Below, one piece after another: positions 5,141 to 43,238 of a DNA stretch of 64,000 nucleotides (the stretch's first letter is position 1; every line of letters starts with the position of its first letter). A model generated the notes under the pieces. It worked only from the letters and a program-made list of their open reading frames with translations, was not told the origin of the DNA and made no database searches. The position numbers were made by a program, and so were the translations under genes. The stretch lies in IMG/VR virus record IMGVR_UViG_3300040801_004034, positions 62,001-126,000 of that record; one strand, 5' to 3'.

Positions 5141-5908
5141 CTATTCTACATCAAATTTATAATCTATATATGGAATTTTTATACAACCGTTTTCTTTATA
5201 CATTTTGTTCAAAGCTTCTTGTTGTTTATATTCTATAGGATCAATATATTTTGCATCTATAAAACCTTTTAATCTTAACGAACTACTTGCTGTTTTAGCA
5301 TCACAAGGTGATGCACCACTATAACATGTAAATGTTTTATCAAATGGTACTTCAAGATTTACACCAAGTTCCATGATTTCTTTCTTCGATAAATCTAATA
5401 GCGGTGCTTCGATTGTAATGCGATGATGTCTATTAAGTTTTGTAATTTCATTTATTGTGTTGACAAAAGGGTAATCGGAATCCCAGTATCCTGCCAAGCT
5501 ATCCACCTGAGCTGCTCCATACCACACAACATCTGCACCGACCGATTCAGCATATGAACAACATACAGTAATAAACAATAGATTTCTAAACGGTACATAT
5601 GTCTTCGGTTGTGCTTCACCAATCACCGTGTCTGTTGTTGGTGTTTCAATATCATTATTGGTTAATGAACTTACATTTGCAAGTCTATTCAATAACATCA
5701 TGTCAATAATCTGATTTGTGATAGTAACATTTGGATATTTTCTACATGCATGTTGAATTAATTTAAGAGCACAACTTATTTCAGTATTATGTCTCTGGTT
5801 GTAATCAAACGTTATAGTATGTACTTCTGAATACTCTTCACAAGCTTTATGAAGTAGAACAGCACTATCTGCTCCACCTGATACTGTTAATACAATTTTT
5901 TTATTCAT
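5141..5908 (-). CDS. queC: 7-cyano-7-deazaguanine synthase QueC
   Basis: SGGADS PP-loop, TITFDYNQRH, YVPFRN, GYWD, APLLDLSKKEI, TFTCY; likely start Met at 5908. Confidence 0.9.
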   Translation of the reverse strand: MNKKIVLTVSGGADSAVLLHKACEEYSEVHTITFDYNQRHNTEISCALKLIQHACRKYPNVTITNQIIDMMLLNRLANVSSLTNNDIETPTTDTVIGEAQPKTYVPFRNLLFITVCCSYAESVGADVVWYGAAQVDSLAGYWDSDYPFVNTINEITKLNRHHRITIEAPLLDLSKKEIMELGVNLEVPFDKTFTCYSGASPCDAKTASSSLRLKGFIDAKYIDPIEYKQQEALNKMYKENGCIKIPYIDYKFDVE

Positions 5909-6155
5909 TTTCATTGTTTTTGATTTGTTCATCAATTGATGCTAAAACTGATTTTAATGTTTCATTATCGTGTGGTAATTGATCAAATACAAATTCAGGT
6001 GTTAATCGAACCTCTTTATTATCATCATTTGTATAAACCAGTTTCGGATGAAGATTTTCATCTATGATTCTTTCTAAAAACGTATACCCTCTTTCACTAA
6101 GATAATATGCTATACACTTTTCATTAATTTTATAATCATCAATCTTCTTGTTCAT
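5901..6155 (-). CDS. Hypothetical protein
   Basis: Short ORF overlapping uvsX and queC in the same operon. Confidence 0.5.
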   Translation of the reverse strand: MNKKIDDYKINEKCIAYYLSERGYTFLERIIDENLHPKLVYTNDDNKEVRLTPEFVFDQLPHDNETLKSVLASIDEQIKNNENE

Positions 6156-7230
6156 CTTCGTCTGGTGTTTCATTATGTTCTTTGCTACCGTATTTCCACT
6201 CTACAGCAATACGTTCTTCAATACGTGGTACAATTCGTTCATCCCACAACTTAGTGTTGTTTTTCCAGGTTCCAAAATATCCTAATTTCTCACCATCAAT
6301 TGTATATGTAGCTCCAGATTGTTCAACTACACCTAATCCTTTTGCTAGTGCAAGAAGACCATAATATTTGTCTAAACCACTAGCAAATGACAGATACATT
6401 TCACCTTCAAGATACTGTTGCACAAAACGATTTTTAACAGTAAGTGCTCGTAAGATAACACCCGGGAAGTTCTTTTGACCTGTTGTAAGTTTACCATCTG
6501 TATTATCTTTACCTTCTTTAATCGGTTTACGAGCTAACTGAACTGTAACCGATGGAAGATATACAACTGCTTTACCACCCGGCATCAATTTCTCAAGTGA
6601 TGGAAACATTGCTGATGGGTCTTCATAAACATGGTTTGTTGCAAGAATGGTTGTCTGTGTAAGACCACTCAACTGCACACATGTTCGTAGAAGCGTCTTC
6701 ATTGCTCTAGCACGGCTACCCATATCTGTACTCGTATTGTCTTTCTCCATACGGTTGATCTGGATTTCACTTTCCATATTACCGAGAGAATCAATTGCAA
6801 TAATGAACTTATCAGTCAAACCTTTTTCTTTGGCCACTGTTAAGAACTTATAAATCGCATTTCGACATTCCTCAATCGAAAAGACCGGTACATACTTGAC
6901 TTTTGAAACATCTAAACCAAGAGCTTCAGCACCTTTTCTATCAATTGCATTTTCACTATCAAAAATAACAACTGTATAACCTTCTTTTTGTGCATTAGCA
7001 AGAATACGTTGAACAATGTATGATTTACCAGCCATTGAAGGACCAGCAAATAGTGTCATACGATTTTTGGGTACACCACCAAAAAGAGAACCGGAAATGA
7101 TGCCGTTAAGCACCATTGATCCGGTATCAAACCACCCACCTGTACTACTCAACGTTTCTTCGTCAAGAAACGAAGAGTAGGGGTTAAGTTTGTCTATCTC
7201 ACCTAAAACAGAAGTTATATCTTTATCCAT
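6139..7230 (-). CDS. uvsX: RecA-like recombinase UvsX
   Basis: DTGSMVLNGIISG, Walker A GPSMAGKS, FDSENA, IDSLG, TNHVY, GG and KNRF motifs. Confidence 0.92.
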   Translation of the reverse strand: MDKDITSVLGEIDKLNPYSSFLDEETLSSTGGWFDTGSMVLNGIISGSLFGGVPKNRMTLFAGPSMAGKSYIVQRILANAQKEGYTVVIFDSENAIDRKGAEALGLDVSKVKYVPVFSIEECRNAIYKFLTVAKEKGLTDKFIIAIDSLGNMESEIQINRMEKDNTSTDMGSRARAMKTLLRTCVQLSGLTQTTILATNHVYEDPSAMFPSLEKLMPGGKAVVYLPSVTVQLARKPIKEGKDNTDGKLTTGQKNFPGVILRALTVKNRFVQQYLEGEMYLSFASGLDKYYGLLALAKGLGVVEQSGATYTIDGEKLGYFGTWKNNTKLWDERIVPRIEERIAVEWKYGSKEHNETPDEDEQED

Positions 7231-7237
7231 GTATTAA

Positions 7238-7585
7238 TTATAACACATGATCGGTATCTTTCAATACCTCTACAATCTTTTTAGAAAGATAATTGTTCTT
7301 ATCTTTGTTCTCATCCAAGAACTCACGCCATGTTTGAATAACACTGCGGATCTTTTGGAGCTCTGGATTTGCAACAGGTCCGAGACCTTTATCAGCTCCA
7401 GCAATTGCGTTTTTCAATACATTGATAGCACCTTCAACACCTGCTGCTTGACCACGAGCAAAGGCCGGGTGCTGTCTTGGCGTATCGTCTGTTTCAGGGT
7501 TGTCTAGATATGATCCATGTTTAATATTTGAAAACTTATAGTCATCATTCGGATCAACTTTTGCTTCTTGATATAATTTACTCAT
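7238..7585 (-). CDS. Hypothetical protein
   Basis: 115-aa ORF in the replication operon. Confidence 0.55.
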   Translation of the reverse strand: MSKLYQEAKVDPNDDYKFSNIKHGSYLDNPETDDTPRQHPAFARGQAAGVEGAINVLKNAIAGADKGLGPVANPELQKIRSVIQTWREFLDENKDKNNYLSKKIVEVLKDTDHVL

Positions 7586-7946
7586 CGAACAAATTGATTA
7601 CCTTGTCATCACCTTGTGCGGGTACATTTTCAACAAGCTTGGGACGAACGATACGTTGATATTGCTCACCGATGCGAGCATCGATGTCAAAGCCTTTACT
7701 CATTGTGATTTGATCATTCTTATAAACGAATGTTACATCACGGTTACCATCTGCATCCGGCTCAACAAACTCACCGAAAAATAAAGGAAATAGCTGAACA
7801 GCCATTTGACCTTGTTGCTGCTGTTGAACGTTAATCATAACCGGATTGGTTACAGCTAGCTCACCAGACTGTTGTTCATCCGCCTTTTCGGCGAAAATTG
7901 TGCGACCTGTTTGGTCAAGGAACATTACGTATTTATTTTCTTCCAT
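7578..7946 (-). CDS. Hypothetical protein
   Basis: 122-aa ORF with TTGACT-N16-TAAAAT upstream. Confidence 0.6.
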   Translation of the reverse strand: MEENKYVMFLDQTGRTIFAEKADEQQSGELAVTNPVMINVQQQQQGQMAVQLFPLFFGEFVEPDADGNRDVTFVYKNDQITMSKGFDIDARIGEQYQRIVRPKLVENVPAQGDDKVINLFDE

Positions 7947-7975
7947 ATCTTATTTTATAAACATTAAACTCGAAG

Positions 7976-10570
7976 TCAACCTAGCAACTCAAGTAATGAT
8001 GTTTTAGTTTGGTTATCTGGTTTCTGAATAGGCCAATGAACTGTTTCATAAAAACGTCGTATACACTGAAACAGAACCTTTTCAAACATTATATTATAAT
8101 CGATTTCAATATTATCTTTAAACTCTTTCGGGTAGTCATATTTGAACCCTAAACAATCAATATTGTACCTATTTGGTTTTTGAACATAGAATGTTCTAAC
8201 TTTATCACCTGATTGAATTTTTTCATAATTAGATGCGATATCAAACCTATCAAGTAACAAGTTATGATAGTATGCAGCTTTTGCATGCATCGGCATACCT
8301 TTACATGTCTTAAACCCATCACACTGTTCGATATATTTTTCAAATTGATGAATACCTGAAATCGAAGCAATATCTTTCACATCCATTGCAATCACATCAT
8401 CATATGCTTTCGATAGAACACGATTAGTCTGCTGTATGCTTTGCGTTCTAAGCATTGTTTCAATGATATCCTTTGCATATGGTTTGATTTTAACTGGCAT
8501 TGTTGATCTTACAACTTCAACACCTTTGTATTTGAATTTATCACATGCAATACCTTCATCATCAAGAATACGGAGTACATAACGTTTCTTACCTGTAAAT
8601 ACACCAACACTTGCAATAACTTCACGCTTAAACACAAATGAGCAATTCTTAGAGTTTAGAGCTTTTGCTCCCCATTTTTTAATACCTACATTCAAGTAAT
8701 CTTCAACCTTTTGAATAGCGTCATAACCATCTTGCGTCACATACTGCTTGTTATCTTTTTCATCAATAACTTTAATACCTTGATGGTCAGTTAAAGCTTT
8801 AATCGATGCATATGTACTGTCTGTATCATTATATATTACAGATTTTTCAAGTGCTAATTCATCTACATCAGGTACTTGTTCTTTGATGTAATCTTTTATT
8901 AATTGATTAGCTTGTTTGATAACACCTTGACCTGTTAATGTAATCGACATACCAATATCTCTATCTCCCATTGGTGCATAACTATTTGCAAAGTATCCAT
9001 AGATTGAGTTAATGAAAATCTTAATACACAACTGTTTTGCATCTAGTTGTTCAATTTTATGTTTTACTTTACGTATTTCATCTTTATCAGCACCGGACTT
9101 TTCCATTTCGGCTTTTTTAACACGAAGTTTTTGCATCTCTTTCTTTACAACAACCCGTTTATCGTAATTGTACTGCAAAATCTTTGGCATAAGACCGAGA
9201 TTCTTTTGTGAAAACATAATATTCGCTTTACTGATTCCGACTTCATGTTTTTTAACAAATTTAACGAAATTCTCCGGCGTAAGTTCATGAACTGTCCCGT
9301 TTATGAGTTGTATTTTGATACATTCATCAGTTTTGCTCAATATCTTACCTAGTTTTGTTTCTGGAGACATATTAAGTGAAATCATCACGTTCGGATACAA
9401 ACTATTCGCATCAAAACTGATTACATTTTCATGAAAACCATCTTGAGGTTCACCTACATATGCTCCTGGAATTCTACCTTGTTCATTTCGTTTGAATGTT
9501 GGTATAATTTGACCTTGACGTCTAGCTTGAATTGCAGCACTACCATTAATAACGGAAATTGCACCAAGAGATTGTTCAAATGTGGTTAACCCAGTGTATG
9601 CTAACATTCGAGCCAATCCGAAATAGTTTAATTTCTCTTCTAGGTTGACAAGAAGTCTAACGTCCTGAATGTTGTATTCAACGAACTTTTGCCAGTTAGT
9701 ACGAGCTAACTCACCAATTGAAATATCACCATAATCGATTTTCTTCTGACCTAACTCGAGTTCGCCGATCGTATCAAGTTTGTAGTTTTCTTTTTCTCCA
9801 GGACTGAACTGTTTATAGACTTCAAGGTAGTCAAGTACCGATACACCTCGAATAGTCCATTTTTTAATAGCCATACCCGCATCGGTAATAATATCCCTGC
9901 ATGATATGTCTCTTGATGGAGATAAACGTTCCATCCATTTACGACCTACTATCTTATCCCCTCTAGCAATAAGGTATGGTAAGTCGAAACCATGTAAATT
10001 CCATGCACTTATGATATCAGGGTAGTCCTTCTCAAAATATAATATAAATCGTTGAAATAACTGTTCTTCATTATCACACTGAACATATTTTACATCAGGG
10101 TCGTTATTTTTATATGGTCCAATACCGAATACAGTATGAATGTTTGTAAGTGAATCATGTAGTGTAACAACATTAACAACTTGTTGCGGATCATGTATAT
10201 TTGGGAAACCTGTATCATCTACCTGTGTTTCAATATCGAGAAAAACACATTTGATAGGATGAATTGAGAAATCTTCATCTTCATTATGTTTCCAATATTC
10301 ATCTACTAAAAACTGCTGTACTGGTGGTAAATTCTCAAAGAACCGATTCGTTGATACATCATTTGTATATTTGTACCGTTCATAAGCAGTTCCAAAAGAT
10401 TTTTTGCGTAGTCCAGTTTTAAAAATAGATTGACCTTCACCATCACTATGCTCGATATAAAGATATGGTGAGTAGTGGTGTCTTACAACTGTTCTCTCAC
10501 CATTTTCATCCCATGTATGTACATATACACTTCTTCCTTTGGGATCATAATAAGCATTTCTATAACTCAT
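7976..10570 (-). CDS. gp43: Family B DNA polymerase (gp43-like)
   Basis: ExoI DIET, ExoII WNLHGFDLPY, YNIQD; Pol motifs FDANSLYP, KIFINSIYG, YNDTDS, KKRY. Confidence 0.97.
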   Translation of the reverse strand: MSYRNAYYDPKGRSVYVHTWDENGERTVVRHHYSPYLYIEHSDGEGQSIFKTGLRKKSFGTAYERYKYTNDVSTNRFFENLPPVQQFLVDEYWKHNEDEDFSIHPIKCVFLDIETQVDDTGFPNIHDPQQVVNVVTLHDSLTNIHTVFGIGPYKNNDPDVKYVQCDNEEQLFQRFILYFEKDYPDIISAWNLHGFDLPYLIARGDKIVGRKWMERLSPSRDISCRDIITDAGMAIKKWTIRGVSVLDYLEVYKQFSPGEKENYKLDTIGELELGQKKIDYGDISIGELARTNWQKFVEYNIQDVRLLVNLEEKLNYFGLARMLAYTGLTTFEQSLGAISVINGSAAIQARRQGQIIPTFKRNEQGRIPGAYVGEPQDGFHENVISFDANSLYPNVMISLNMSPETKLGKILSKTDECIKIQLINGTVHELTPENFVKFVKKHEVGISKANIMFSQKNLGLMPKILQYNYDKRVVVKKEMQKLRVKKAEMEKSGADKDEIRKVKHKIEQLDAKQLCIKIFINSIYGYFANSYAPMGDRDIGMSITLTGQGVIKQANQLIKDYIKEQVPDVDELALEKSVIYNDTDSTYASIKALTDHQGIKVIDEKDNKQYVTQDGYDAIQKVEDYLNVGIKKWGAKALNSKNCSFVFKREVIASVGVFTGKKRYVLRILDDEGIACDKFKYKGVEVVRSTMPVKIKPYAKDIIETMLRTQSIQQTNRVLSKAYDDVIAMDVKDIASISGIHQFEKYIEQCDGFKTCKGMPMHAKAAYYHNLLLDRFDIASNYEKIQSGDKVRTFYVQKPNRYNIDCLGFKYDYPKEFKDNIEIDYNIMFEKVLFQCIRRFYETVHWPIQKPDNQTKTSLLELLG

Positions 10571-10600
10571 AGGCTTATTATATATGACAAATACTGTTTA

Positions 10601-11655
10601 TCAATTATACCTAGAAAGATTTTTGCGTAAGTCGCTACCATACCCATATTTGTACATCTCTAAATAACAATCGATATTTCGATCTGTTTCTAACCAACGT
10701 GTTTCAGCATATTGCCGAGCTTTCTTGCTCTGTGATTTATACTGTTTTGTGTTTGATAGCGTTTTTTGTATTTGATCAATCATCTCATCACCGGTCGAAA
10801 ATTTTATAGGTGCATTCTGATATGTACAAAGATCTTGACATGCAATAGGTAAACCAAATGCACTCGATTCAATATATTTCAGATCAGATTTTGATTTGTT
10901 AAATGTGTTATCCATTAATGGTGCAATCATCATATTACAATTCAGATCTTGTATAGTTTGCCCATAATCATAAAACTGAGCCCAAGGGTGAAATTCAATT
11001 TTACCACTTCGAACAAGATCACCTAAAGGTAAAGGATATGCTCCCATAAACACCCACTGATATTTGTCTACTGTCTTACGGATGACATCATTTACATGAT
11101 AAAAATCATCCTTATGCTTTACTCTACTATCAACATCAAAGTGCGCACCACTGCCTGTATATAATATACGAGGTTTTCTTTTGTATTTTTCTAAATTCTG
11201 CATGATCTTACTCTGATCATAGAAATGACCTAACCAGAATTTCGGCATAAAGTTTGGTAGCACTGTGATATTTTTATTACCTGTTTTTTCACTATAATAA
11301 TCTCTCATGAAATCATTTGTTACAGTAATTTCATCACACAGTGCCATAATCTGTTGAGTGGATTCTCTGATCTTCGGATCTGCAAATGCTTCTCTGTATT
11401 TGTTATAACCAGGAATGTCTTCATAGAAACAGATATCATCAATTTCATAAACAATTCTAAAACCGTCTTTATCAGCAACTTGTCTTAAGAACTTAACAAA
11501 TTCAAGCTGTTGCGGTGTTGCTTGTCGTTGTATCCTAACACATTTTGTACTTACATAATAACGCGGGTCAAGATTCATTACAGTGGTAGATTGTACAACA
11601 GCTTTTCTATGACCGTTCATTACCTGCTCTGGCCAAATCATACGCCAGTGACCGC
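10601..11655 (-). CDS. GT-B glycosyltransferase, exon 2
   Basis: After splicing reads ...ADYSG-C-GHWRMIWPE; YEIDD, DEITVT and APL..N.FNKSKSDLKYIE motifs of phage GT4-like enzymes. Confidence 0.85.
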
Positions 11656-12051: not shown

Positions 12052-12055
12052 AATA

Positions 12056-32358: not shown

Positions 32359-32983
32359 AGTAGTACATATTTTATGGTGGGACATTACTGAAAAACCAGA
32401 CTTCTTCGATGAAAATATCAGTTCATGGACTGAACATAACCCTGAATGGACTGTTAAAGTATGGGGTAGACAGGAATGCTATTCATTGTTAAAAGTATTC
32501 TACCCTAGATACTTCTGTATGTTCGAAGAATATGAACATGATATTCAAAGAATTGATGCAATAAGATATTTTATACTTCATTTAGATGGTGGGTTATATG
32601 CTGATATCGATATCAAGTGTAATAAATGTATTGATAATATTATCGATAATGAGGATGTTTTATTTAAAGAAGGAAAGAATCAAACAAAGTTATTCCCGAA
32701 TCTTACAAACATTACAAATAGTATAATGTATAGTACAGGTAAGAGTGTTTTTTTCAATTACATAATTAAAATGCTGTTTTTAACTAAACAGAAAGATGAA
32801 CAGAATGATGTGTTAAATGTATTATACTCAACTGGACCTGGTTTAGTAACTGCCGCTCATGATTTATTCAATACAAGACATGTTACAGTTCACCCAAGTA
32901 CATTTTTCGATGAACCACCTTGTATATATGGACAGCATTTGTATATGAATTCATGGTTTAATAAAGAGAATGTTATTATATGA
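32351..32983 (+). CDS. GT32 (OCH1-like) glycosyltransferase
   Basis: SW...NPEW, QRIDAIRYFILHLDGGLYADIDI, TGPG, H....SW; GTG start at 32351. Confidence 0.88.
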   Translation: MNKVVHILWWDITEKPDFFDENISSWTEHNPEWTVKVWGRQECYSLLKVFYPRYFCMFEEYEHDIQRIDAIRYFILHLDGGLYADIDIKCNKCIDNIIDNEDVLFKEGKNQTKLFPNLTNITNSIMYSTGKSVFFNYIIKMLFLTKQKDEQNDVLNVLYSTGPGLVTAAHDLFNTRHVTVHPSTFFDEPPCIYGQHLYMNSWFNKENVII

Positions 32984-33972
32984 TTTTAACTAAAAGACAA
33001 ATAGATGCAATGGTAAATACTATACCAAATACATTTGATAATATTCTTCATGAATCTAGTATACTGGTCGATAAGAGTAAGTTTGATATCAGCACTATTG
33101 ATGATCATGGTGATATAATAACTATTGATACGATCAGTAAATGTAACTTACACTGTTCATTTTGTAGAGGTAGTATATCTAATATAGGTGAACTTTCAAA
33201 ATTACAAACAATGACTCAAACTGCATTTGAAATATTTGTAAAAAGAGCAACTGATTATGGTATTAAGCATATTGAAATGACACCTGCTATAGGAGAGCCG
33301 TTTATTGATAAGGGTATTATCGATAAGCTTAAACATCTTGAAGAGAATGATAAAATAGAGAGTTACATCATAACAACAAACCTCACTATGTGGAAGGATG
33401 TACATTTTGAATTCATAAAAACATGTAACAAGATTGTATTTAATATTTCACTTTATGGATATGATGAAGAATCATACAGCAAATCAACAAACCGTAAAAA
33501 CAAGTTTCAAACGTTCTATGCAAATTTTACACGTTTAGCAGATATCGTTCATGAGTATGACAATGTATATATGATTATTTTCATGAGATGCGGATTACCA
33601 TTTAATCACAGGTTTCCGAGAACTCCTATTTTTTACGATGTATTCAATTTAGCAAACCTTAAAAACTGTTGGTTAAATAACGGTGATATTGAAAATATCA
33701 ATCGTGCTGCAAATCTTGAAGGGTTTGAAAAGAAGTCACGTCAACGTTCTGGTATATGTCCGAATGGCCCTGGAATCGGCGGTGGTGTAATAGCGAATGG
33801 TGATTTTCTCTTCTGTCCATTCAATGATATCAACAGAGTTGGTGTTGTCGGTAATTTATATACCCAGTCGTTAGAAGAAATATACAGTGGTGATAAATGG
33901 CAAGAAATTTTAAATAATCATATGAATAATACATATATCGGTATTTGTAAAAACTGTGATGAGACGTGGTAG
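32980..33972 (+). CDS. Radical SAM / SPASM-twitch protein
   Basis: CNLHCSFC, GEP, TTN; C-terminal C..NGDFLFC..VGNL..C..C. Confidence 0.9.
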   Translation: MILTKRQIDAMVNTIPNTFDNILHESSILVDKSKFDISTIDDHGDIITIDTISKCNLHCSFCRGSISNIGELSKLQTMTQTAFEIFVKRATDYGIKHIEMTPAIGEPFIDKGIIDKLKHLEENDKIESYIITTNLTMWKDVHFEFIKTCNKIVFNISLYGYDEESYSKSTNRKNKFQTFYANFTRLADIVHEYDNVYMIIFMRCGLPFNHRFPRTPIFYDVFNLANLKNCWLNNGDIENINRAANLEGFEKKSRQRSGICPNGPGIGGGVIANGDFLFCPFNDINRVGVVGNLYTQSLEEIYSGDKWQEILNNHMNNTYIGICKNCDETW

Positions 33973-34940: not shown

Positions 34941-35969
34941 TTATTTAAGCATTGATTCGTATACCTCTTTTGGCACACCTGCTGTAAAGCCACCTGGTAC
35001 ATTCTTAACGATTACCGAGATAGCATCATGACTATGTAAACTCTCCCAATGTCCAGCAACAATCTTAAAGTCAAGAATCCGTTCATCATCATCAAGCTGT
35101 TCATACATTAATCTTACAGCATCTTCAACAAACTTAAGATTAGCACCGTTCAATTCTGCAAATGCTTGTTCATCTTCACGCTTAACGATAACTTGCGTTT
35201 CCGTCTGTAACGCTTCAAGTAACATTTCTTGGAGATCCTCAATCCATACATCTTCATCAAACACGATTGATACTCTCGCTGTAGAACGTTGTGAATGCGG
35301 TACTGTTGCTCTGTTTCTATATTTTTCAGCATGTTCTGCTAGCTCAAAACTACATGGGCATGCTGATGAGTATACAAAGTCAAAGTGTATAAGTTTTTTC
35401 ACACTTCCGTCTTTAGCAATATCACATTCAAAACACACATCATAATATTGATAACCCTCATTATCTGATCTTAGACTCTTTTGTAAGATAGGGTATGAAA
35501 ACTTAAGCATGATTCTTGCATCGAACACTTCAAGATTTTTCTTATAATCATTCAATATATTCACAATATTTTCGAAATCAAACACTTTATCTTTATGAGC
35601 ATAGAACGATCTCATAATACGTGACATGTTGATTCCCTTTTTATGTGCTTCAAGCGAGACAGAACCAGTAATTGATGTTTCTAACGTAATTGTTGAACCA
35701 TCTCTTTTAAGAACTTTAAGTGGTAACCTAAAATTATGAATACCTACTTGCTGAATTGCAACAGGGGCTCCTTGAATCAAACTTGATGGACCATTTTGTA
35801 AATCAGGTAAAGATTTAATGTATTTTTTATTAGCTACGACAGTATCATCGTATTCCCTAATAGGCGGTTTATATGATGATGCATATTCATCACCCATAAT
35901 ATCATGAGCAATTTTATCTTTATCGCCACTCATCTCGTCATCACCTAACCAAATATATTTCTTATTCAT
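34941..35969 (-). CDS. folE2: GTP cyclohydrolase IB FolE2
   Basis: LPDLQN, IQQVGI, KGINMSRI, YSSACPCS, HSQRS, KREDEQAF, FVEDAVR, ESLHSHDA. Confidence 0.95.
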   Translation of the reverse strand: MNKKYIWLGDDEMSGDKDKIAHDIMGDEYASSYKPPIREYDDTVVANKKYIKSLPDLQNGPSSLIQGAPVAIQQVGIHNFRLPLKVLKRDGSTITLETSITGSVSLEAHKKGINMSRIMRSFYAHKDKVFDFENIVNILNDYKKNLEVFDARIMLKFSYPILQKSLRSDNEGYQYYDVCFECDIAKDGSVKKLIHFDFVYSSACPCSFELAEHAEKYRNRATVPHSQRSTARVSIVFDEDVWIEDLQEMLLEALQTETQVIVKREDEQAFAELNGANLKFVEDAVRLMYEQLDDDERILDFKIVAGHWESLHSHDAISVIVKNVPGGFTAGVPKEVYESMLK

Positions 35970-36023
35970 ATGTCTATTATATAATGCTGCAATCTGTAAT
36001 CAACTGATATATTAAATAATAAT

Positions 36024-36551: not shown

Positions 36552-36619
36552 AATAATAAAATACTGGTTGATTACTGGATTTCGGCCGGTATAATTGATG
36601 TAGAGAAGAAGAGAAAACA

Positions 36620-36877: not shown

Positions 36878-36878
36878 T

Positions 36879-37154
36879 ATGAATCTAGGAGATATTTATT
36901 CACAACAAGTTAATGGTAGAAGAGTACCACAACAAACGATTACGTCAGGTAATTTTGAAGGTATTCAAAGAAGATCAGATGGTAAGATTGAAAAATTAGA
37001 AGCTGATACACTTTCAAAACTTAGCCAAGCTCAACAACAGTTATCACCGACACCCAAGATTGATGATCAAAAAAGAGTTACACCGCAAGATAGTTTACAA
37101 CCTGTATCTCTAGAAGATGCAATGAAAGAGTTACTTGAACTTGAAAATTCTTAA
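36879..37154 (+). CDS. Hypothetical protein
   Basis: 91-aa ORF coupled to the previous gene. Confidence 0.5.
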   Translation: MNLGDIYSQQVNGRRVPQQTITSGNFEGIQRRSDGKIEKLEADTLSKLSQAQQQLSPTPKIDDQKRVTPQDSLQPVSLEDAMKELLELENS

Positions 37155-37326
37155 ACAATTTTTCTGTAGACATCATTGGAAGAGAATTGAACGTCAATTC
37201 CTAAGACCAGGTATAGAAAGGTCTGGACCGTTTATTGATAAAATATACTATTTTGAAATTACTGATGAATGTACATTATGTAAAAAAATCAGAAAACAAG
37301 AAAAATATACATATGTTAATTTTTAA
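37135..37326 (+). CDS. Small putative zinc-ribbon protein
   Basis: C.H.W ... CxxC pattern. Confidence 0.45.
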   Translation: MNLKILKQFFCRHHWKRIERQFLRPGIERSGPFIDKIYYFEITDECTLCKKIRKQEKYTYVNF

Positions 37327-38099
37327 TCATTGTTTATAGATTCAAGACGTTCAACAATAAATCTCAATATTTCACTTCTTACGATATCATCACCATTGAA
37401 CTTGAAAGTATCAATACCTTCATCAGAACAACTAGGGTGATCGAATGCTTTAAAGATGTCTTTAAATCCTGTTTTGGATCCAATATCAGCTTGATATGTA
37501 TCACCAACAACAAGATATTTACTATCAACACCAAATCTTGTTAAAATAGTGATAAGCTCGGATCTAGTCATATTTTGTGCTTCGTCAATTATTACACAAC
37601 TATTTTTAAATGTTAAACCTCTTGTAAAATTAACTGGTATACATTTTATATAATTTTTTGACATCAAATTTTTACTTACATTACCATCCAAAATCTCATC
37701 AAGCTTATCAATCAACGGCATAGACCAAGGAGCAAACTTCTCTTCTAATTCCCCAGGGAGAGCACCCATACTACGGGATGCACTTTCTACGATTGATCTG
37801 ATATAAATGATGTTGTCTATTCGATGTTCATTTAAAAGTTTAAGAGCTGCTAGAACGGCAATATATGTTTTAGCTGTTCCAGCCGGGCCATCAACAATAC
37901 ACATATGATTTGATGGATTAATTGCTGATGAAAGAAAAACTTTTTGTCGTTCAGTTAGTTCATAATCTTGGTTGATTTTGAAATCTAAATCCCATGTTTC
38001 ATCTTGTGCTGGTATGACAAGTTCAATTTCAGTGCGAGGAGCTGTTACTTTTTTTCGAACAACTTTTTTACTCTTACGAGTAGACTTTTTTGTTGGCAT
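37323..38099 (-). CDS. phoH: PhoH-family ATPase
   Basis: GPAGTAKT, MGALPG..EEK, RGLTF, IIDEAQN, TRFG and GD..Q motifs. Confidence 0.95.
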   Translation of the reverse strand: MPTKKSTRKSKKVVRKKVTAPRTEIELVIPAQDETWDLDFKINQDYELTERQKVFLSSAINPSNHMCIVDGPAGTAKTYIAVLAALKLLNEHRIDNIIYIRSIVESASRSMGALPGELEEKFAPWSMPLIDKLDEILDGNVSKNLMSKNYIKCIPVNFTRGLTFKNSCVIIDEAQNMTRSELITILTRFGVDSKYLVVGDTYQADIGSKTGFKDIFKAFDHPSCSDEGIDTFKFNGDDIVRSEILRFIVERLESINND

Positions 38100-38188
38100 A
38101 TACTTGTATTTATTGATTTTTAACATATCAAAACAATGGTCTCCAAATCAGTTGTTTTTCATAAATAATATACTACAATGTAGACAAT

Positions 38189-38947
38189 ATGATCGATACA
38201 GCTAAAGAAACATTGTTTATGAGTGATGACAAGGTATTTTACACTTGTGAAGGGGAAGGTGAATATGTCGGTAAGCCATCAGTATTCTTTAGAGTATCGA
38301 TGTGTAATTTAACTTGCAAAAATTTCGCATCAGAAGATTCACCACATGGGTGTGATTCATACATTTCATGGAGTGTTAAAAATAAAATGACATTTGATGA
38401 AATCTTTGAATATATGGAAGAAAGACGCTATATTGAATTTCTTAGAAACGGAGCATTACTTAAATTAACAGGCGGTGAGCCATTAGTAAGTCAAAAGAAA
38501 TTACTCAAGTTCATCGAAGCATTTATAGAGAGATATGAGTTTTATCCTAGAATCGATTTTGAAACGAATGCTACCATTATGCCAGACAAAAGATGGGTAG
38601 AAGAATTTGGTGCAACATTTACAACATCACCTAAGCTTTCTACGAATGGTGATCCGGAGAGTAAAACATACAAACCTGATGTGCTTAAATGGCACGTTGA
38701 AAATAATAGTGGTTTCAAATTCGTTATTACTTGTTCAGAAGATATTGAAGAAATTTGGAGAAAGTATGTCGATGAGCGTAATGATATTAATGTTCCGCTA
38801 GATCGTGTATGGTTCATGCCTTGTTGTGGTTCACGCAGTGAGCATATAGAGAACGCACCTGCTGTAGCAGAATATGCTAAAGCGTGTGGTGTTAATTTCA
38901 GTCCTAGAATGCATTTATTAATCTGGGACTTAGCTTTACGAGTTTAA
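38189..38947 (+). CDS. queE: 7-carboxy-7-deazaguanine synthase QueE
   Basis: FYT.EGEG...G.PSVF.R..CNL.C...CDS, TGGEP, ETN, SPK, SPR.H. Confidence 0.92.
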   Translation: MIDTAKETLFMSDDKVFYTCEGEGEYVGKPSVFFRVSMCNLTCKNFASEDSPHGCDSYISWSVKNKMTFDEIFEYMEERRYIEFLRNGALLKLTGGEPLVSQKKLLKFIEAFIERYEFYPRIDFETNATIMPDKRWVEEFGATFTTSPKLSTNGDPESKTYKPDVLKWHVENNSGFKFVITCSEDIEEIWRKYVDERNDINVPLDRVWFMPCCGSRSEHIENAPAVAEYAKACGVNFSPRMHLLIWDLALRV

Positions 38948-38970
38948 GGAACAAATATAACATTCATGCT

Positions 38971-39366
38971 ATGATAAAATACGAAACAAAAAGAATTATT
39001 AGCGTACAAGATTGGGACGAACTTGTATCTGAAACATATGGTAAACCATATTCATTACAACAACAAGATGGTTGTAAAGAACGACAAGTTGAGAATATTA
39101 CCGTACCAGACTTAGAAGCCTGGGATTTTGAGAATGATACTATTCCGGAAGAAGTTAATGGAGATGAAATGGGGGTAAGCTTTAAATCATGGCTTGCAAG
39201 AGATCCAAAACAACCACTTAATACAGGTGATGACTGGGATAGAAAGCATGGGGTACGATTATTCTGGGAACGTAATTTTTATCCTGCTCTAGGTATAATT
39301 ATTAACGACTTACATAAAAAGGGTTTAATTGAAGCTGGTGAATACGGCATTGATATAGACTGGTAA
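38971..39366 (+). CDS. Hypothetical protein
   Basis: 131-aa ORF with its own GGAAC-type promoter. Confidence 0.6.
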   Translation: MIKYETKRIISVQDWDELVSETYGKPYSLQQQDGCKERQVENITVPDLEAWDFENDTIPEEVNGDEMGVSFKSWLARDPKQPLNTGDDWDRKHGVRLFWERNFYPALGIIINDLHKKGLIEAGEYGIDIDW

Positions 39367-39407
39367 AAAAAATTTAAGCAGAAATCAATTACAGGTGCTT
39401 AACGAAC

Positions 39408-39444
39408 AAAAAAAGAGCAGCTTCATTTACGAGGCTGCTCTTTT
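39408..39444. terminator. Bidirectional intrinsic terminator
   Basis: AAAAGAGCAGCTTC-loop-GAGGCTGCTCTTTT between convergent genes, with A/T tracts on both sides. Confidence 0.85.
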
Positions 39445-39462
39445 AATGTTAAATGTTAATGC

Positions 39463-39834
39463 TTAAACGTAACCGAGATGATGAAGTCTTGCTAAGTTAG
39501 CTGAAACTGAATCATAACCAGGTCCTGCTGATACTGTTTGTAGTGTTGTACCAGATGCAACTGTAAACTGTGTTGAAAGACGACCGCTATCAATAATAGC
39601 AATTGTTGAACTATCATAACCAGCATACATTAAGAATACAAACTCATCACCATTATGTATGGTGCTTAAAGTAACAACTGTCGTGTCGGTTCCTTTATCA
39701 GCTGCATTATAAAGTAGCTTTGCTGTACTATCTGCACTCAATGACTGTGCTGTTACATCGTTAAGTGCTGAAACACCATCTGTTACACTTCCTGTGCCGA
39801 AAATTAGTTCATCTGTAAATTGAATATTGCTCAT
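39463..39834 (-). CDS. Late Ser/Thr-rich protein, probably virion structural
   Basis: Full TATAAATA promoter at 39840-39847; amino-acid composition. Confidence 0.55.
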   Translation of the reverse strand: MSNIQFTDELIFGTGSVTDGVSALNDVTAQSLSADSTAKLLYNAADKGTDTTVVTLSTIHNGDEFVFLMYAGYDSSTIAIIDSGRLSTQFTVASGTTLQTVSAGPGYDSVSANLARLHHLGYV

Positions 39835-39876
39835 ATTATTATTTATAGGTTATCATAACCGGATTACAAAAATATC

Positions 39877-40362
39877 TTATTTTAATCTCCCACCTGGGGT
39901 AAAGTAGAAACCTATTACAGCTGCTAATGTTATAATCGAAACAAGTGTTATATGACCAGTTGTAATTACAACAGTAGAATCAAGATTAAGTGGTATAGTA
40001 ATCATACCCCAGAGAAAATCTAAACTCTCTTTGTTAACTGGTGGAAAAAACGTTATCAATTCCACGCTTGGGAATAATGTACATAATACTGAAATAACAA
40101 AAAAGTTTATCATACCTATTACAGCAAGAATACGTCTTGTTTGTCTTGCAAACATCGATGTTTCTGGTGATGAGTCACCAAACACCATTTTCTGAACTTC
40201 AACATCAAGTTTTGATCGTTCTAGATCACGGATCATTTCACGTTTTTCATGAGCTTCTTTAGCTCCGGCAATTCTATCAATAATGCCAGCACCTACTTTA
40301 AGTAAAGACCCCATTCCGGTAGCCCCTAAAGTAGAGAAAATCATTGTAAGTAACCCGATCAT
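39877..40362 (-). CDS. Membrane protein (holin-like candidate)
   Basis: N-terminal amphipathic helix plus two hydrophobic segments, ending IGFYF. Confidence 0.5.
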   Translation of the reverse strand: MIGLLTMIFSTLGATGMGSLLKVGAGIIDRIAGAKEAHEKREMIRDLERSKLDVEVQKMVFGDSSPETSMFARQTRRILAVIGMINFFVISVLCTLFPSVELITFFPPVNKESLDFLWGMITIPLNLDSTVVITTGHITLVSIITLAAVIGFYFTPGGRLK

Positions 40363-40366
40363 AACA

Positions 40367-40477
40367 CTATGCGTTTGACTTACCTGGTTTTACACCGAAT
40401 GTAAGTACTGGTTCTGTCTTAGCTTTAGCATTAGTTGTTTTAGCTTTTGGTTGTTTTGTTTCTTTTTTCTTAAACAT
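40367..40477 (-). CDS. Small basic late peptide
   Basis: TAAATA-N5-ATG at 40477; MFKKKETKQPK. Confidence 0.45.
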   Translation of the reverse strand: MFKKKETKQPKAKTTNAKAKTEPVLTFGVKPGKSNA

Positions 40478-40493
40478 ATAATTATTTATTAAA

Positions 40494-40697
40494 TTACCAG
40501 CTCTGCCATAAAGGTGGTGATTTATAAATAGTTGTTCTAGGTTGTTGCTCTTGTCGCTCACCTTGTTGTTCTATAAAGGGTCTTGTATTTAATTCACGTA
40601 CTGGTTGAGGTCGATATTCTGGTAAACTACTGGGTGATTTACAACCGATAAAAAAACCTGAAACAATGATACAACTAACTAAAACAAACATCTTCAT
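40494..40697 (-). CDS. Small lipoprotein
   Basis: Signal peptide with lipobox-like FIG-C; TAAGTA-N5-ATG. Confidence 0.55.
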   Translation of the reverse strand: MKMFVLVSCIIVSGFFIGCKSPSSLPEYRPQPVRELNTRPFIEQQGERQEQQPRTTIYKSPPLWQSW

Positions 40698-40705
40698 AAC
40701 AATAC

Positions 40706-41407
40706 TTATTTAAGAATATCATATTTTTGTGAATTCATATGTACTGCTAATAATGTCCGTATCTCAGTTTTCATGTAATTGAGATTGATATATTTCCACT
40801 GACCATCTACAAGATAATATATAACAAGATGCTTACATTTTTTACCTGTCATTTCTTCATATAAATGAGCATACATAGAAAGCTGTAAACAGTAACTATT
40901 GAATTCACAAACAGAAAGATGCTGCAGCGGGTATTTATGGTAGTCATTATATGTACTAAAAAATCTAAATCGTCTATTTGTTTTAAAATCCCCTATAAAG
41001 AAACTATCCCCGTCTACAAATATTAAGTCAGCTAAGCCTGCAATGTTATATTCTGTATTATAAACCAAGAACTCACTTTCAATGTTTTTAAACTTCGGGA
41101 TATGAGGCTTACTTTCTTCAAATGTACTATACAACTGTGCAAACTGAGGTTCTTGTTTATTATCAACAATATAGTCTTCCATAACTTTGTGAATCTTAGT
41201 ACCTTTTTCGCATGCAACATCGCATTTATTTTGCCACTGATCTAAAACCATCTGCTTTGGTACACCTTCACGTTTTGCAACTCGTGCAGCATGAAGATGT
41301 TTATCGAATTTAGGTTTATATTGACCAAGCAGTGTTGTCACCGATGTCATTTTTTTACCATTTTCGGTATTTGTATATGTATGTGTTGGCTCGTCGAATA
41401 CAATCAT
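40706..41407 (-). CDS. PD-(D/E)xK (Cas4-like) exonuclease
   Basis: FDEPTHTY, SVTTLL, GT.IH, E, AGLAD, DFKT and Y.LQLS.Y motifs. Confidence 0.85.
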   Translation of the reverse strand: MIVFDEPTHTYTNTENGKKMTSVTTLLGQYKPKFDKHLHAARVAKREGVPKQMVLDQWQNKCDVACEKGTKIHKVMEDYIVDNKQEPQFAQLYSTFEESKPHIPKFKNIESEFLVYNTEYNIAGLADLIFVDGDSFFIGDFKTNRRFRFFSTYNDYHKYPLQHLSVCEFNSYCLQLSMYAHLYEEMTGKKCKHLVIYYLVDGQWKYINLNYMKTEIRTLLAVHMNSQKYDILK

Positions 41408-41465
41408 TTGAATTTATTATAACATAAATGTTTGAAAAACCAAATCCGGTTGTTATAATAAGAAT

Positions 41466-42284
41466 ATGAGATTAAGTATCAGCGGAACAGCAAGCATCGG
41501 AAAGTCAACATTAATAGGTGATATGCTTGCTACATGGCCAGCATTCGAACACACAAAAGTGTCATATAGAGATATTCTTACGAATCAAAATTTACCACAT
41601 AGTAAAGAGTCAACAAAAGAGACACAATGGGCTATTTTGAATCATATGGTTGATCAGATGCAAGGGTACACACCACAAGATAAAGTAATCTTTGATAGAT
41701 GCCCTCTTGATAATTTAGTTTATAGCATGTGGTTATTTGATAAAGGTCTTGGTGGTGTCGACGAGAAGTTTATTGATAAGTGTCTTCCTATTGTATCTGA
41801 AAGTATGAAATCACTTGATATCATATTTTTCATTCCTATGACAAAATTCAATAAAATGAATATTGTAGATAACGGTACAAGAGAAACAGATCCGGTTTAC
41901 ATTTCTGAAATTGATCAAATATTCAAAGGTCTCCAAGCTCAGTACCAACAGCACCCGCAAGAAAATCCTTTCTTTCCGCGAGATGATTCACCAGCTCTTA
42001 TAGAGATTTTCGGATCAAGAAAAGAACGTATTCAAATGATAAAACTTTATCTTGATGATGATGGTGATGTTATTGGTGGGGAAAATGGAGCTAATGAAGT
42101 TTTCTCTCCGGAAAATATCAGTTTAGTTGAAGATCTTTTAAAGGAGCAACAAAAACTAAATGATAGTGAAAAAGCTTATACCGCTGAAATGGACAAAATT
42201 AAGGACTTTGTTAGACATAACAAAGGTGTAGATGTCGGTGTTGATATCAGAAAGCTTTCAAAAGATAAATATGATCTTTATTAA
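41466..42284 (+). CDS. P-loop nucleotide/nucleoside kinase-like protein
   Basis: ISGTASIGKST and IFDRCPLDNLVY motifs. Confidence 0.75.
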   Translation: MRLSISGTASIGKSTLIGDMLATWPAFEHTKVSYRDILTNQNLPHSKESTKETQWAILNHMVDQMQGYTPQDKVIFDRCPLDNLVYSMWLFDKGLGGVDEKFIDKCLPIVSESMKSLDIIFFIPMTKFNKMNIVDNGTRETDPVYISEIDQIFKGLQAQYQQHPQENPFFPRDDSPALIEIFGSRKERIQMIKLYLDDDGDVIGGENGANEVFSPENISLVEDLLKEQQKLNDSEKAYTAEMDKIKDFVRHNKGVDVGVDIRKLSKDKYDLY

Positions 42285-42592
42285 GCGTTTGCTATGGTGG
42301 TTACAGTACCACTTGAACCTTTATATTTAAAAGCACCGTTCTGTACATAAAATGTACCACCATTTACTGGTGTATCAGGTTCGGATGTATTTTTAACTGT
42401 AATAGCAGTATCAAATGTACCAGAACCTATATCAGCTATAGCTGATCCAAAAGTGGTGTTATCCAAATCAATGACAAAATTACTGAATGGTATTTTAAAT
42501 GTACCGCCTTGTGTTTCTACAATCAGATAATCACTAGGATTTATTTCGGATGCTTCTGGTAATGTTTTAATTGATTTTGAATTGCCTGCCAT
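42281..42592 (-). CDS. Late protein, possibly virion structural
   Basis: TAAATA-N5-ATG; IKTLPEA...DYLIVET and fibre-like C-terminus GAFKYKGSSGTVTTIA. Confidence 0.55.
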   Translation of the reverse strand: MAGNSKSIKTLPEASEINPSDYLIVETQGGTFKIPFSNFVIDLDNTTFGSAIADIGSGTFDTAITVKNTSEPDTPVNGGTFYVQNGAFKYKGSSGTVTTIANA

Positions 42593-42638
42593 ACAATTAT
42601 TTATTGGATTCTCAGAATTAACAACATATAATCATGTT

Positions 42639-43238
42639 ATGTGGAAAATAGCTAAACAATTCGATTTCTGTTACGGTCATCGCGTATGGAATCAAACTCT
42701 CAATACTGACTTTTCGATTGACGGTCGTTGTGTATGTCGTCACCTTCATGGTCACCAAGGAACAGTTAAAGTGTTTCTTGAAGGTGATGAATTAACAGCT
42801 GGTATGGTAACAGATTTTAAGCACCTTAACTGGTTAAAGAAATTTCTTGATGATGTTTTAGATCATAAGTTCATTATTGATAAGAATGATCCGATGATTG
42901 ATGCTATTATACCATTCAATTGTATTGATGGTGTTGAAAAACGAGAGAACGGTTGGGTATTTGATGGACAACTTAATATAACTACATTATGTTTTACAAA
43001 ACATTTTATACACAACACAGGTTATTCGACGATTAATACAAATCTAATTGCAAAACAAACACCTGATATGCAAGATATTCTTGAAGGGTTCGTTATCGTG
43101 GATTTTATACCAACATCAGAAAATCTCTCTAAATGGATTTGTGATATTGCTAATGCAAAGATGAATAAGATTGGTGTGAAAGTAAGTAGGGTTCAATTCT
43201 TTGAAACTCCTAAATCACAAGCAAACTATTATGTGTAA
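42639..43238 (+). CDS. queD: 6-carboxytetrahydropterin synthase QueD
   Basis: F.FCYGHR, C.HLHGH, GMVTDF, LDHKF, PTSEN and ETP motifs. Confidence 0.92.
   Translation: MWKIAKQFDFCYGHRVWNQTLNTDFSIDGRCVCRHLHGHQGTVKVFLEGDELTAGMVTDFKHLNWLKKFLDDVLDHKFIIDKNDPMIDAIIPFNCIDGVEKRENGWVFDGQLNITTLCFTKHFIHNTGYSTINTNLIAKQTPDMQDILEGFVIVDFIPTSENLSKWICDIANAKMNKIGVKVSRVQFFETPKSQANYYV

What the first reader, a model, noticed from the sequence alone, without database searches (positions are those of the whole stretch)
5141..43238. Complete but scattered preQ0 pathway (folE2, queD, queE, queC): probable 7-deazaguanine-modified genome
All four GTP-to-preQ0 steps are present at separate loci (5141, 34941, 38189, 42639). 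queC sits in the uvsX/polymerase operon, the neighbourhood where T4 keeps its own DNA-modification genes. The cyclohydrolase is FolE2, not the FolE usually described in phage dpd clusters. No DpdA/TGT, QueF or ArcS was recognised in this window, so the final base and its insertion route are open. DNA modification is inferred; tRNA queuosine supply is an alternative.
Basis: partly seen in the sequence, partly recalled or inferred. Interest (0 to 1): 0.72.

Follow-up and report, generated by a model that had tools for sequence, protein, structure and literature searches.

The report
Phage kit for deazaguanine DNA
This uncultured T4-like phage carries all the genes to make the guanine substitute preQ1 and, just outside the window, the enzyme type that swaps it into DNA, so its genome is very probably 7-deazaguanine-modified, like a few cultured relatives.

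Summary
queC (5141-5935), folE2 (34941-35969), queE (38189-38947) and queD (42639-43238) are all real. The window has no transglycosylase or QueF, but the 221-kb genome does. About 21 kb past the window end lies an overlapping three-gene block: a 262-aa DpdA3-family DNA-guanine transglycosylase, a nucleoside/nucleotide-kinase-like protein, and bimodular QueF. The transglycosylase is 49% identical to that of Flavobacterium phage immuto_2-6A and 46-47% to Campylobacter CP220-type phages. Its model has pLDDT 97.7 and a TGT fold, and the three catalytic Asp are kept. Pfam TGT and PHROGs do not name it, which is why it looked absent. No DpdN, DpdM, ArcS, QueA or tRNA-type TGT was found. The best reading is DNA G replaced by preQ1, likely at high level as in the DpdA3 phages that have been measured. 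FolE2 is not a one-off. Among five large relatives, two have FolE2 and three FolE, never both, and at least 195 IMG/VR contigs carry this FolE2. The scattered layout is conserved in a distant complete relative. The tRNA-queuosine rival is weak but not excluded, because the phage has about 39 tRNAs, five with GUN anticodons. The conserved kinase and a purine phosphoribosyltransferase are unexplained. This is a new variant of a known kind.

The parts
5141..5935 (-). queC, 7-cyano-7-deazaguanine (preQ0) synthase. PP-loop SGGADS is present. Three of the four canonical Zn-ligand cysteines are replaced.
   Evidence: Pfam QueC E 6.5e-50. NCBIfam TIGR00364 is above its cut-off. Alignment to QueC structures 2pg3 and 3bl5 shows the loss of the CGxCxxC motif.
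34941..35969 (-). folE2, GTP cyclohydrolase IB, with an N-terminal extension of about 54 aa. It is preceded by TATAAT-N6-ATG.
   Evidence: PF02649 E 4.3e-71. NCBIfam FolE2 equivalog 270 bits against a cut-off of 215. No FolE in the genome.
38189..38947 (+). queE-like radical-SAM enzyme (7-carboxy-7-deazaguanine synthase). It is divergent, with Cys spacing C39-x3-C43-x11-C55.
   Evidence: The five best NCBIfam hits are all QueE models but lie below their cut-offs. The only PDB hits are three QueE structures. It is 53% identical to the counterpart in relative G001.
42639..43238 (+). queD, 6-carboxytetrahydropterin synthase with an insertion. The CxxxHGH motif is kept, so it is QueD and not DpdL.
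   Evidence: PF01242 E 2.3e-27. Motif CRHLHGH is seen in the translation.
41466..42284 (+). kinB, a paralogue of the cluster kinase kinA, which lies outside the window. It has an AAA_28/dNK-like P-loop domain plus a C-terminal extension of about 116 aa, and sits just upstream of queD. Its role is unknown.
   Evidence: Pfam AAA_28 E 1.4e-8. PHROG 'thymidylate kinase' E 1.2e-15. 25% identical to kinA. Conserved in G001 at 52%.
2156..2824 (-). Stand-alone class-II glutamine amidotransferase domain, 2.3 kb from queC. It is a possible ammonia donor for QueC. The association is weak.
   Evidence: Pfam GATase_6/7. Homologous to KVP40.0125, which abuts KVP40 queC. The same position relative to queC is kept in G001. 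Among GenBank phages its homologues are not specific to que-carrying phages.
63549..64000 (+). Start of a tRNA array of about 39 tRNAs plus a tmRNA that runs to genome 143.2 kb, beyond the window. The part outside the window includes Tyr-GTA, Asp-GTC x2, Asn-GTT and His-GTG, the anticodons that receive queuosine. It matters only for the rival explanation. The parts of the system outside the window (DpdA3, kinA, QueF, PRT) cannot be entered here; their genome coordinates are given in the full report.
   Evidence: ARAGORN.

Best explanation
The phage makes preQ1 from GTP with its own enzymes: FolE2, QueD, QueE and QueC give preQ0, and QueF reduces it to preQ1. A DpdA3-type transglycosylase then exchanges guanine in phage DNA for preQ1, giving 2'-deoxy-preQ1 DNA that resists restriction enzymes and other DNA-targeting defences. 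What is shown here: the genes exist, they are intact, and they are conserved in relatives. The transglycosylase has a TGT fold, keeps the three catalytic aspartates, and is close to the DpdA3 of phages whose DNA was measured. What is inferred: that the substrate is DNA, that the inserted base is preQ1 without further decoration, and that replacement is high or complete. Most of the genes (folE2, queD, kinB and dpdA3, like uvsX and the DNA polymerase; not queC, queE or queF) carry a TATAAT-N6-ATG start-site motif. This suggests they are expressed with replication rather than late.
For: All five base-synthesis enzymes are identified. The DpdA3 homologue shows 46-49% identity to immuto and Campylobacter phages. 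Its fold search returns only tRNA-guanine transglycosylases. D52, D83 and D204 are invariant or nearly invariant in 125 homologues. They match the Asp95/Asp130/Asp256 pattern of bacterial DpdA. The DpdA3-kinase-QueF block recurs in 76 of 79 IMG/VR loci, mostly next to gp23. A complete relative that shares only 111 of 375 ORFs, at a median 45% identity, keeps every pathway gene in the same scattered layout. Published measurements give 100% replacement of G in the three DpdA3 phages tested, CP220, phiST and immuto_2-6A; DpdA is proposed as the signature of DNA deazaguanine (PMC10516641). There is no tRNA-type TGT, QueA or ArcS. There is no DpdN or DpdM.
Against: No chemical or sequencing-signal data exist for this genome. 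The public runs that hold it are kept as contigs only. DpdA3 activity has never been reconstituted; the authors' attempts in E. coli failed (PMC10516641). QueE is divergent with an unusual cysteine spacing, and QueC lacks most Zn ligands. The immuto QueC also lacks them, and that phage is modified. Palindrome statistics give no clear sign of relaxed restriction avoidance.
Confidence: 0.78

Rival explanations
1. The modified base enters DNA before or during replication. The purine phosphoribosyltransferase and the two kinase-like proteins would turn the 7-deazaguanine base, or a base-exchanged dGMP, into a nucleotide. The phage reductase and polymerase would then carry it into DNA. DpdA3 would act on nucleotides or only mop up residual G.
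For: The kinase has a nucleoside/nucleotide-kinase fold, not that of a DNA-acting ATPase. It is glued to QueF or DpdA3 in 76 of 79 loci and in CP220 and immuto. PRT homologues among 50,697 GenBank phage records are almost confined to DpdA3 phages, 19 of 23. DpdA3 is a minimal 262-aa barrel. DpdA3 alone did not modify DNA in E. coli, and an ADG nucleoside was seen in CP220-infected cells (PMC10516641). From my own knowledge, a preQ0 phosphoribosyltransferase (ToyH) exists in toyocamycin biosynthesis.
Against: No HD, MazG or dUTPase_2-type dGTP-clearing enzyme was found in this genome. PRT is absent from relative G001 at the sensitivity used. The kinase may simply be a ribosylnicotinamide or dNMP kinase. 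The complex prediction for DpdA3 with the kinase gave no answer. The published view is post-replicative insertion.
Confidence: 0.18
2. The genes are an auxiliary metabolic set that supplies preQ1 for queuosine in tRNA. The tRNAs could be the host's or the phage's own five GUN tRNAs, with insertion by the host TGT. DNA is not modified.
For: The phage encodes about 39 tRNAs, including Tyr-GTA, Asp-GTC x2, Asn-GTT and His-GTG. preQ1 is the substrate of bacterial TGT. Metagenome surveys file viral queC/D/E under tRNA queuosine (PMC13288924).
Against: A DpdA3 gene overlaps the kinase-QueF block and is conserved with it. DpdA3 lacks the Zn and tRNA-binding parts of TGT. No QueA and no tRNA-type TGT were found. 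In the DpdA3 phages that have been measured, the DNA is modified.
Confidence: 0.06
3. The DNA base is preQ1 decorated further by an enzyme not yet linked to deazaguanines, for example one of the glycosyltransferases next to queD and kinB.
For: The aminomethyl group of preQ1 is formylated or methylated in other phages. DpdN is present in 27 of 79 related loci but absent here. A GT2 glycosyltransferase stays next to kinB in relative G001.
Against: There is no direct link. Phage glycosyltransferases usually act on other targets. The larger GT genes have no counterpart in G001.
Confidence: 0.15

Closest known systems
[quoted passage not shown]
   Same: DpdA3 is 49% identical. The order DpdA3-(DpdN)-kinase-QueF is the same. 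A homologous PRT is present. QueC lacks the Zn cysteines in both.
   Different: There is no DpdN formyltransferase here, so plain dPreQ1 is predicted. FolE2 stands in place of FolE. QueD and QueE are only distantly related. The genes are scattered over 85 kb rather than about 7 kb.
Campylobacter phages CP220/CP21 (Eucampyvirinae; DpdA3; DNA fully dADG)
   Same: Both are T4-like myoviruses. DpdA3 is 46-47% identical, next to a homologous kinase (34% identical). A PRT homologue is present.
   Different: CP220 has no QueF and stops at ADG. Its QueC homologue keeps the Zn cysteines. An HD plus P-loop protein flanks its DpdA3, whereas no HD protein is found here.
Schizotequatroviruses KVP40/nt-1/6E35.1a (DpdA2; dPreQ0/dG+/dPreQ1 at 0.1-15% of G)
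   Same: They are large T4-like phages with FolE-QueD-QueE-QueC-QueF. QueF is strongly homologous (E 1.7e-57) and QueC is 32% identical. A GATase homologue lies beside queC.
   Different: The transglycosylase subfamily differs (DpdA2). They use FolE, not FolE2. Their genes are clustered, and measured modification levels are low.
Bacterial Dpd system (bDpdA plus the DpdB ATPase; preQ0/ADG in DNA)
   Same: The TGT-like barrel and the three active-site aspartates are shared. The profile weakly aligns to 7ui4 over the nucleophile motif.
   Different: No DpdB-like ParB ATPase was seen. The neighbouring P-loop protein has a small-molecule-kinase fold. The protein is 262 aa, against 436 residues in the crystallised bacterial DpdA chain (7ui4). 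There is no restriction module.

Membership tests
DpdA3 subfamily of DNA-guanine transglycosylases | Sequence homology to the DpdA3 proteins of phages with measured modification (phiST CGPG_00065, CP220, immuto_2-6A) | tested here: met
   49%, 46-47% and 26% identity over 92-100% of the length.
DpdA3 subfamily of DNA-guanine transglycosylases | TGT-like TIM-barrel fold | tested here: met
   AlphaFold2 pLDDT 97.7. The Foldseek PDB top 50 are all tRNA-guanine transglycosylases, E 4e-8, TM 0.65.
DpdA3 subfamily of DNA-guanine transglycosylases | Three active-site aspartates of the TGT/DpdA families (general acid, base recognition, nucleophile) | tested here: met
   D52 (LDNSIF), D83 (VPD) and D204 (DTSNP) are invariant or at least 90% conserved in 125 homologues. 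D204 aligns to the SID motif of 7ui4. D52 and D83 are mapped to Asp95 and Asp130 by motif and spacing, which is an inference.
DpdA3 subfamily of DNA-guanine transglycosylases | Exchanges guanine in DNA for a 7-deazaguanine base | not testable with these tools
   This needs an enzyme assay or DNA mass spectrometry. It has not been shown for any DpdA3 in vitro.
preQ0/preQ1 biosynthesis (FolE or FolE2, QueD, QueE, QueC, QueF) | GTP cyclohydrolase I activity provided by FolE or FolE2 | tested here: met
   The FolE2 equivalog model is above its cut-off.
preQ0/preQ1 biosynthesis (FolE or FolE2, QueD, QueE, QueC, QueF) | QueD signature CxxxHGH | tested here: met
   CRHLHGH is present. The NCBIfam score is below cut-off because of an insertion.
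preQ0/preQ1 biosynthesis (FolE or FolE2, QueD, QueE, QueC, QueF) | QueE radical-SAM cluster motif and family score | tested here: inconclusive
   The best hits are all QueE models but score 45 bits or less against cut-offs of at least 200. The Cys spacing C-x3-C-x11-C is non-canonical.
preQ0/preQ1 biosynthesis (FolE or FolE2, QueD, QueE, QueC, QueF) | QueC PP-loop and Zn-binding cysteine cluster | tested here: inconclusive
   The PP-loop SGGADS is present and the equivalog cut-off is met. Three of the four Zn cysteines are missing. The same loss occurs in the QueC of the modified immuto phage.
preQ0/preQ1 biosynthesis (FolE or FolE2, QueD, QueE, QueC, QueF) | QueF motif E(S/L)K(S/A)hK(L/Y)(Y/F/W) and catalytic Cys | tested here: met
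   ESKSIKLYLNS and LLKSNC align with V. cholerae QueF.
Bacterial tRNA queuosine pathway | tRNA-guanine transglycosylase (PF01702) and QueA | tested here: not met
   The six-frame genome searches found nothing at E <= 1. QueG and QueH were not searched.
fdPreQ1 / mdPreQ1 / dG+ variants | DpdN (Formyl_trans_N), DpdM (DUF3109) or ArcS (DUF5591) | tested here: not met
   No matches at E <= 1. There was also no phmmer hit to immuto DpdN.

The most novel reading that the evidence does not exclude
In DpdA3 phages the complete replacement of G may not be a purely post-replicative base swap. A conserved trio would work at the nucleotide level. The trio is DpdA3, a nucleoside/nucleotide kinase and a purine phosphoribosyltransferase. 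It would make a 7-deaza-dGTP analogue for the polymerase, much as T4 makes hmdCTP. Alternatively it would run a closed loop that recycles released guanine through GMP and GTP back into preQ1. Either way, the kinase and PRT would be unrecognised components of the system. That could explain why DpdA3 alone was inactive in E. coli.
Probability: 0.2. Interest if true: 0.85.

Novelty: new variant of a known kind. Interest (0 to 1): 0.55.

Why it matters
It places a large, uncultured group of aquatic T4-like phages in the DpdA3 class of 7-deazaguanine DNA modifiers. At least 568 IMG/VR contigs and 1,426 protein clusters at 50% identity belong to this group. The key enzyme is invisible to Pfam and PHROGs annotation. 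As a result, viral queC/D/E, folE2 and purN-like genes in metagenomes are being read as tRNA or folate 'auxiliary metabolism'. The analysis predicts a combination not yet measured: DpdA3 with QueF but no DpdN, which should give DNA carrying plain dPreQ1 at high level. It also shows FolE and FolE2 replacing one another within one phage lineage. Finally, it flags two conserved neighbours, the kinase and the PRT, that published pathway schemes do not include.

Tried and rejected
- **Pfam TGT over the genome:** the six-frame search found nothing. This was a false negative for DpdA3, resolved by looking at the neighbours of QueF.
- **KVP40 proteins as probes for DpdA2:** no DpdA2 homologue was found.
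- **Complex prediction, DpdA3 with the kinase:** it returned 'no answer', so it counts neither way.
- I rebuilt it without those rows.
- **Sequencing runs:** four runs from one microbial-mat sample hold the sequence, but only as contigs. No read-level signal of modification can be sought.
- **Palindrome avoidance:** CATG, GTAC and GATC are mildly under-represented (ratios 0.79-0.87). The result is not informative.
- **T4 late promoter TATAAATA:** absent upstream of all pathway genes.
- **GATase as a specific partner of QueC:** synteny supports it in one relative, but its GenBank phage homologues are unrelated to que genes. I kept it only as a weak candidate.
- **The 131-aa ORF after queE:** it is conserved in unrelated Vibrio, Aeromonas and Pseudomonas phages, so it is not part of the system.
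- **Host inference from GTDB genomes:** only 9 MAG contigs of mixed taxonomy carry a relative, which gives no host clue.
Full report
**What the window is.** The window is bases 62001-126000 of a 221,292-bp IMG/VR virus record. CheckV rates it 100% complete, and its GC content is 35.5%. It is a very divergent T4-like myovirus. Its UvsX is only about 32% identical to the best cultured matches, which are cyanophages. It has a gp23 capsid protein, a prohead protease and a family-B polymerase. No GenBank phage matches it at the DNA level. The public runs that hold it come from one microbial-mat metagenome.

**The observation.**
- queC lies at 5141-5935(-): Pfam E 6.5e-50, and above the NCBIfam equivalog cut-off.
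- folE2 lies at 34941-35969(-): E 4.3e-71, and above the FolE2 equivalog cut-off.
- A QueE-like radical-SAM gene lies at 38189-38947(+).
- queD lies at 42639-43238(+), with the QueD signature CRHLHGH.

QueE is the weakest call. Every good hit is a QueE model or a QueE crystal structure, but the scores are far below family cut-offs. Its cysteine spacing is C-x3-C-x11-C. It is 53% identical to its counterpart in a distant relative.

queC lies immediately downstream of uvsX and the DNA polymerase on the same strand. The genome has no FolE.

**Parts of the system outside the window.** The report form accepts only window coordinates, so these are given in genome coordinates. Window coordinate equals genome coordinate minus 62000.
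- DpdA3: genome 147471-148259(+), locus L007:6471-7259, 262 aa.
- kinA: genome 148249-148824(+), locus L007:7249-7824, 191 aa.
- queF: genome 148817-149725(+), locus L007:7817-8725, 302 aa. It is convergent with gp23 at genome 149846-151375(-).
- Purine phosphoribosyltransferase-like gene (PRT): genome 161385-161849(-), locus L008:3385-3849, 154 aa.
- tRNA array: genome 125549-143167(+).

**The missing pieces are in the genome.** A six-frame search with Pfam TGT found nothing. Proteins from the KVP40 que cluster, used as probes, picked up a strong QueF homologue. Pfam confirmed a bimodular QueF. The QueF motif and catalytic cysteine align with V. cholerae QueF at E 6.9e-49.

Two genes overlap it upstream: a 191-aa P-loop kinase-like protein, and a 262-aa protein whose only Pfam trace was a sub-threshold match to DUF6610. 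DUF6610 is the Pfam family that the archaeal-virus DpdA4 protein (Halovirus HVTV-1 gp69) matches (PMC10516641).

Evidence on that 262-aa protein:
- It has at least 3,359 metagenomic relatives in the 90%-identity cluster search, the listed ones bearing no functional name, and 1,426 clusters at 50% identity.
- Of 125 diverse relatives, 22 touch DUF6610 and 2 touch TGT; the other families are touched by one or two members.
- tblastn against 50,697 phage records found 26 hits. These include Flavobacterium phage immuto_2-6A, annotated 'DNA guanine transglycosylase' (49% identity over 99%), 14 Campylobacter records including CP220 and CP21 (46-47%), and Cellulophaga phiST (26%). These are the founding members of the DpdA3 subfamily.
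- The AlphaFold2 model has pLDDT 97.7.
- Its best 50 PDB matches are all tRNA-guanine transglycosylases.
- D52, D83 and D204 are invariant or nearly so.
- D204 aligns with the nucleophile motif of bacterial DpdA (7ui4). The D52-x3-F56 pattern mirrors Asp95/Phe99.

PHROGs files the protein under 'unknown function'. That explains why annotation pipelines miss it.

**What base, and how much.** The genome has no DpdN, DpdM, ArcS or QueA. The pathway therefore ends at preQ1, and dPreQ1 is the predicted DNA base. In 79 related IMG/VR loci, DpdN is present in 27 and absent from most of the clade closest to this phage.

The three cultured DpdA3 phages measured (CP220, phiST, immuto_2-6A) have complete replacement of G. 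High replacement is therefore expected here, but that is an extrapolation. No cultured phage with DpdA3 and QueF but no DpdN appears among those described in the papers read.

**FolE2 and the scattered layout are features of the clade.** Among five large relatives that encode DpdA3, two have FolE2 and three have FolE. None has both. At least 195 IMG/VR contigs encode a relative of this FolE2, the 80 best at 72-76% identity, and two of them also carry DpdA3. Only 3 weak FolE2 matches exist in GenBank phages.

The complete relative G001 (209 kb, with terminal repeats) shares only 111 of 375 ORFs at a median 45% identity. It still keeps every element in place:
- GATase and queC beside uvsX and the polymerase;
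- folE2 next to the same small protease-like gene;
- queD;
- PhoH and queE;
- kinB and GT2;
- DpdA3-kinA-QueF next to gp23.

The genes are dispersed but held together by selection.

**Unexplained conserved neighbours.** kinA sits directly upstream of QueF in the IMG/VR loci where both were detected, even where DpdA3 lies 6 kb away. It sits next to DpdA3 in CP220, which has no QueF. Its model resembles deoxynucleoside kinases, thymidylate kinases and the ribosylnicotinamide-kinase domain of NadR. It does not resemble the ParB-like ATPase DpdB that the bacterial enzyme needs.

A xanthine/guanine phosphoribosyltransferase-like gene is also present. Its GenBank phage homologues are nearly confined to the same DpdA3 phages, 19 of 23 records. 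It is found in 4 of 5 large relatives. The paper that defined DpdA3 mentions neither 'kinase' nor 'phosphoribosyl'.

Possible roles for these two genes:
- recycling released guanine into GTP for more preQ1;
- making deazaguanine nucleotides for the polymerase;
- for the kinase, supplying NAD(P) for QueF.

Against a strictly pre-replicative route, the genome shows no HD, MazG or dUTPase_2-type enzyme that could clear dGTP. The complex prediction for DpdA3 with kinA gave no answer.

**The tRNA rival.** The phage carries about 39 tRNAs and a tmRNA, starting at window 63549. Five of these tRNAs have GUN anticodons. Phage-made preQ1 could therefore also feed the host TGT. This cannot be excluded as a side use. 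It does not explain a conserved DpdA3 fused into the QueF operon.

**Verdict.** The finding is real, and its interpretation is supported once the whole genome is read. It is a new variant of the known DpdA3 type of phage DNA hypermodification. It uses FolE2 instead of FolE, has no DpdN, and its genes are dispersed. It represents a large uncultured lineage. Chemistry on the DNA is still needed.

Noticed in passing
window 7228-7242, 10568-10582, 35967-35981, 41454-41468, 42627-42641, 44097-44111 and others; genome-wide about 45-60 genes: TATAAT-N6-ATG sits directly on the start codon of many genes, which implies leaderless or near-leaderless transcripts. These include uvsX, the DNA polymerase, folE2, kinB, queD, GT2, dpdA3 and most small ORFs of the 190-215 kb block. 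The window has 12 matches against 2.5 expected, and no shuffle out of 100 reached 12.
   Followed up: partly
window 5141-5935 (QueC C-terminus): QueC lacks three of the four canonical Zn-ligand cysteines: it reads TCYSGASPCDAKTASSS where the canonical sequence is C-x8-C-x2-C-x2-C. The QueC of the modified phage immuto_2-6A lacks them too, whereas the CP220 homologue keeps them. Together with the Zn-independent FolE2, this hints at a zinc-sparing pathway.
   Followed up: partly
window 63549-64000 and on to genome 143.2 kb (L006): This is a very large tRNA array of about 39 tRNAs. It includes a suppressor-like tRNA with anticodon CTA, a tRNA with the odd anticodon ATA (called Tyr by ARAGORN), and a phage-encoded tmRNA with tag peptide GENQLMAA.
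   Followed up: no
window 54694-57900: A 1068-aa ORF has weak ribonucleotide-reductase barrel and intein-splicing matches. It is probably an intein-containing RNR large subunit.
   Followed up: no
window 4436-5107: A SegE-like GIY-YIG homing endonuclease lies between the GATase and queC. It may have helped to disperse the genes.
   Followed up: no
window 44109-47291: A run of glycosyltransferase genes (GT2; a 530-aa protein with GT2/GT7C and GT10 fucosyltransferase-like parts) lies just downstream of queD. The first GT2 stays next to kinB in relative G001.
   Followed up: partly
window 32980-33972: A radical-SAM/SPASM protein of unknown role lies 1 kb upstream of folE2. It has no counterpart in relative G001.
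   Followed up: no
window 38971-39366: A 131-aa ORF after queE is 50-62% identical to hypothetical proteins of unrelated Vibrio, Aeromonas and Pseudomonas phages (phrog_27943). It is a highly conserved protein of unknown function.
   Followed up: partly
L055, L059, L063, L066, L071, L075, L076 (IMG/VR relatives): In these loci about 6.3 kb is inserted between DpdA3 and the DpdN-kinase-QueF block. The purN-like 'AMG' reported in marine viromes may often be DpdN.
   Followed up: no
GenBank Streptomyces phages such as Karimac and Starbow: Homologues of the cluster kinase (about 30% identity) occur in 89 Streptomyces phage records. These did not appear among the DpdA3 hits, so the kinase family is not exclusive to deazaguanine phages.
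   Followed up: no
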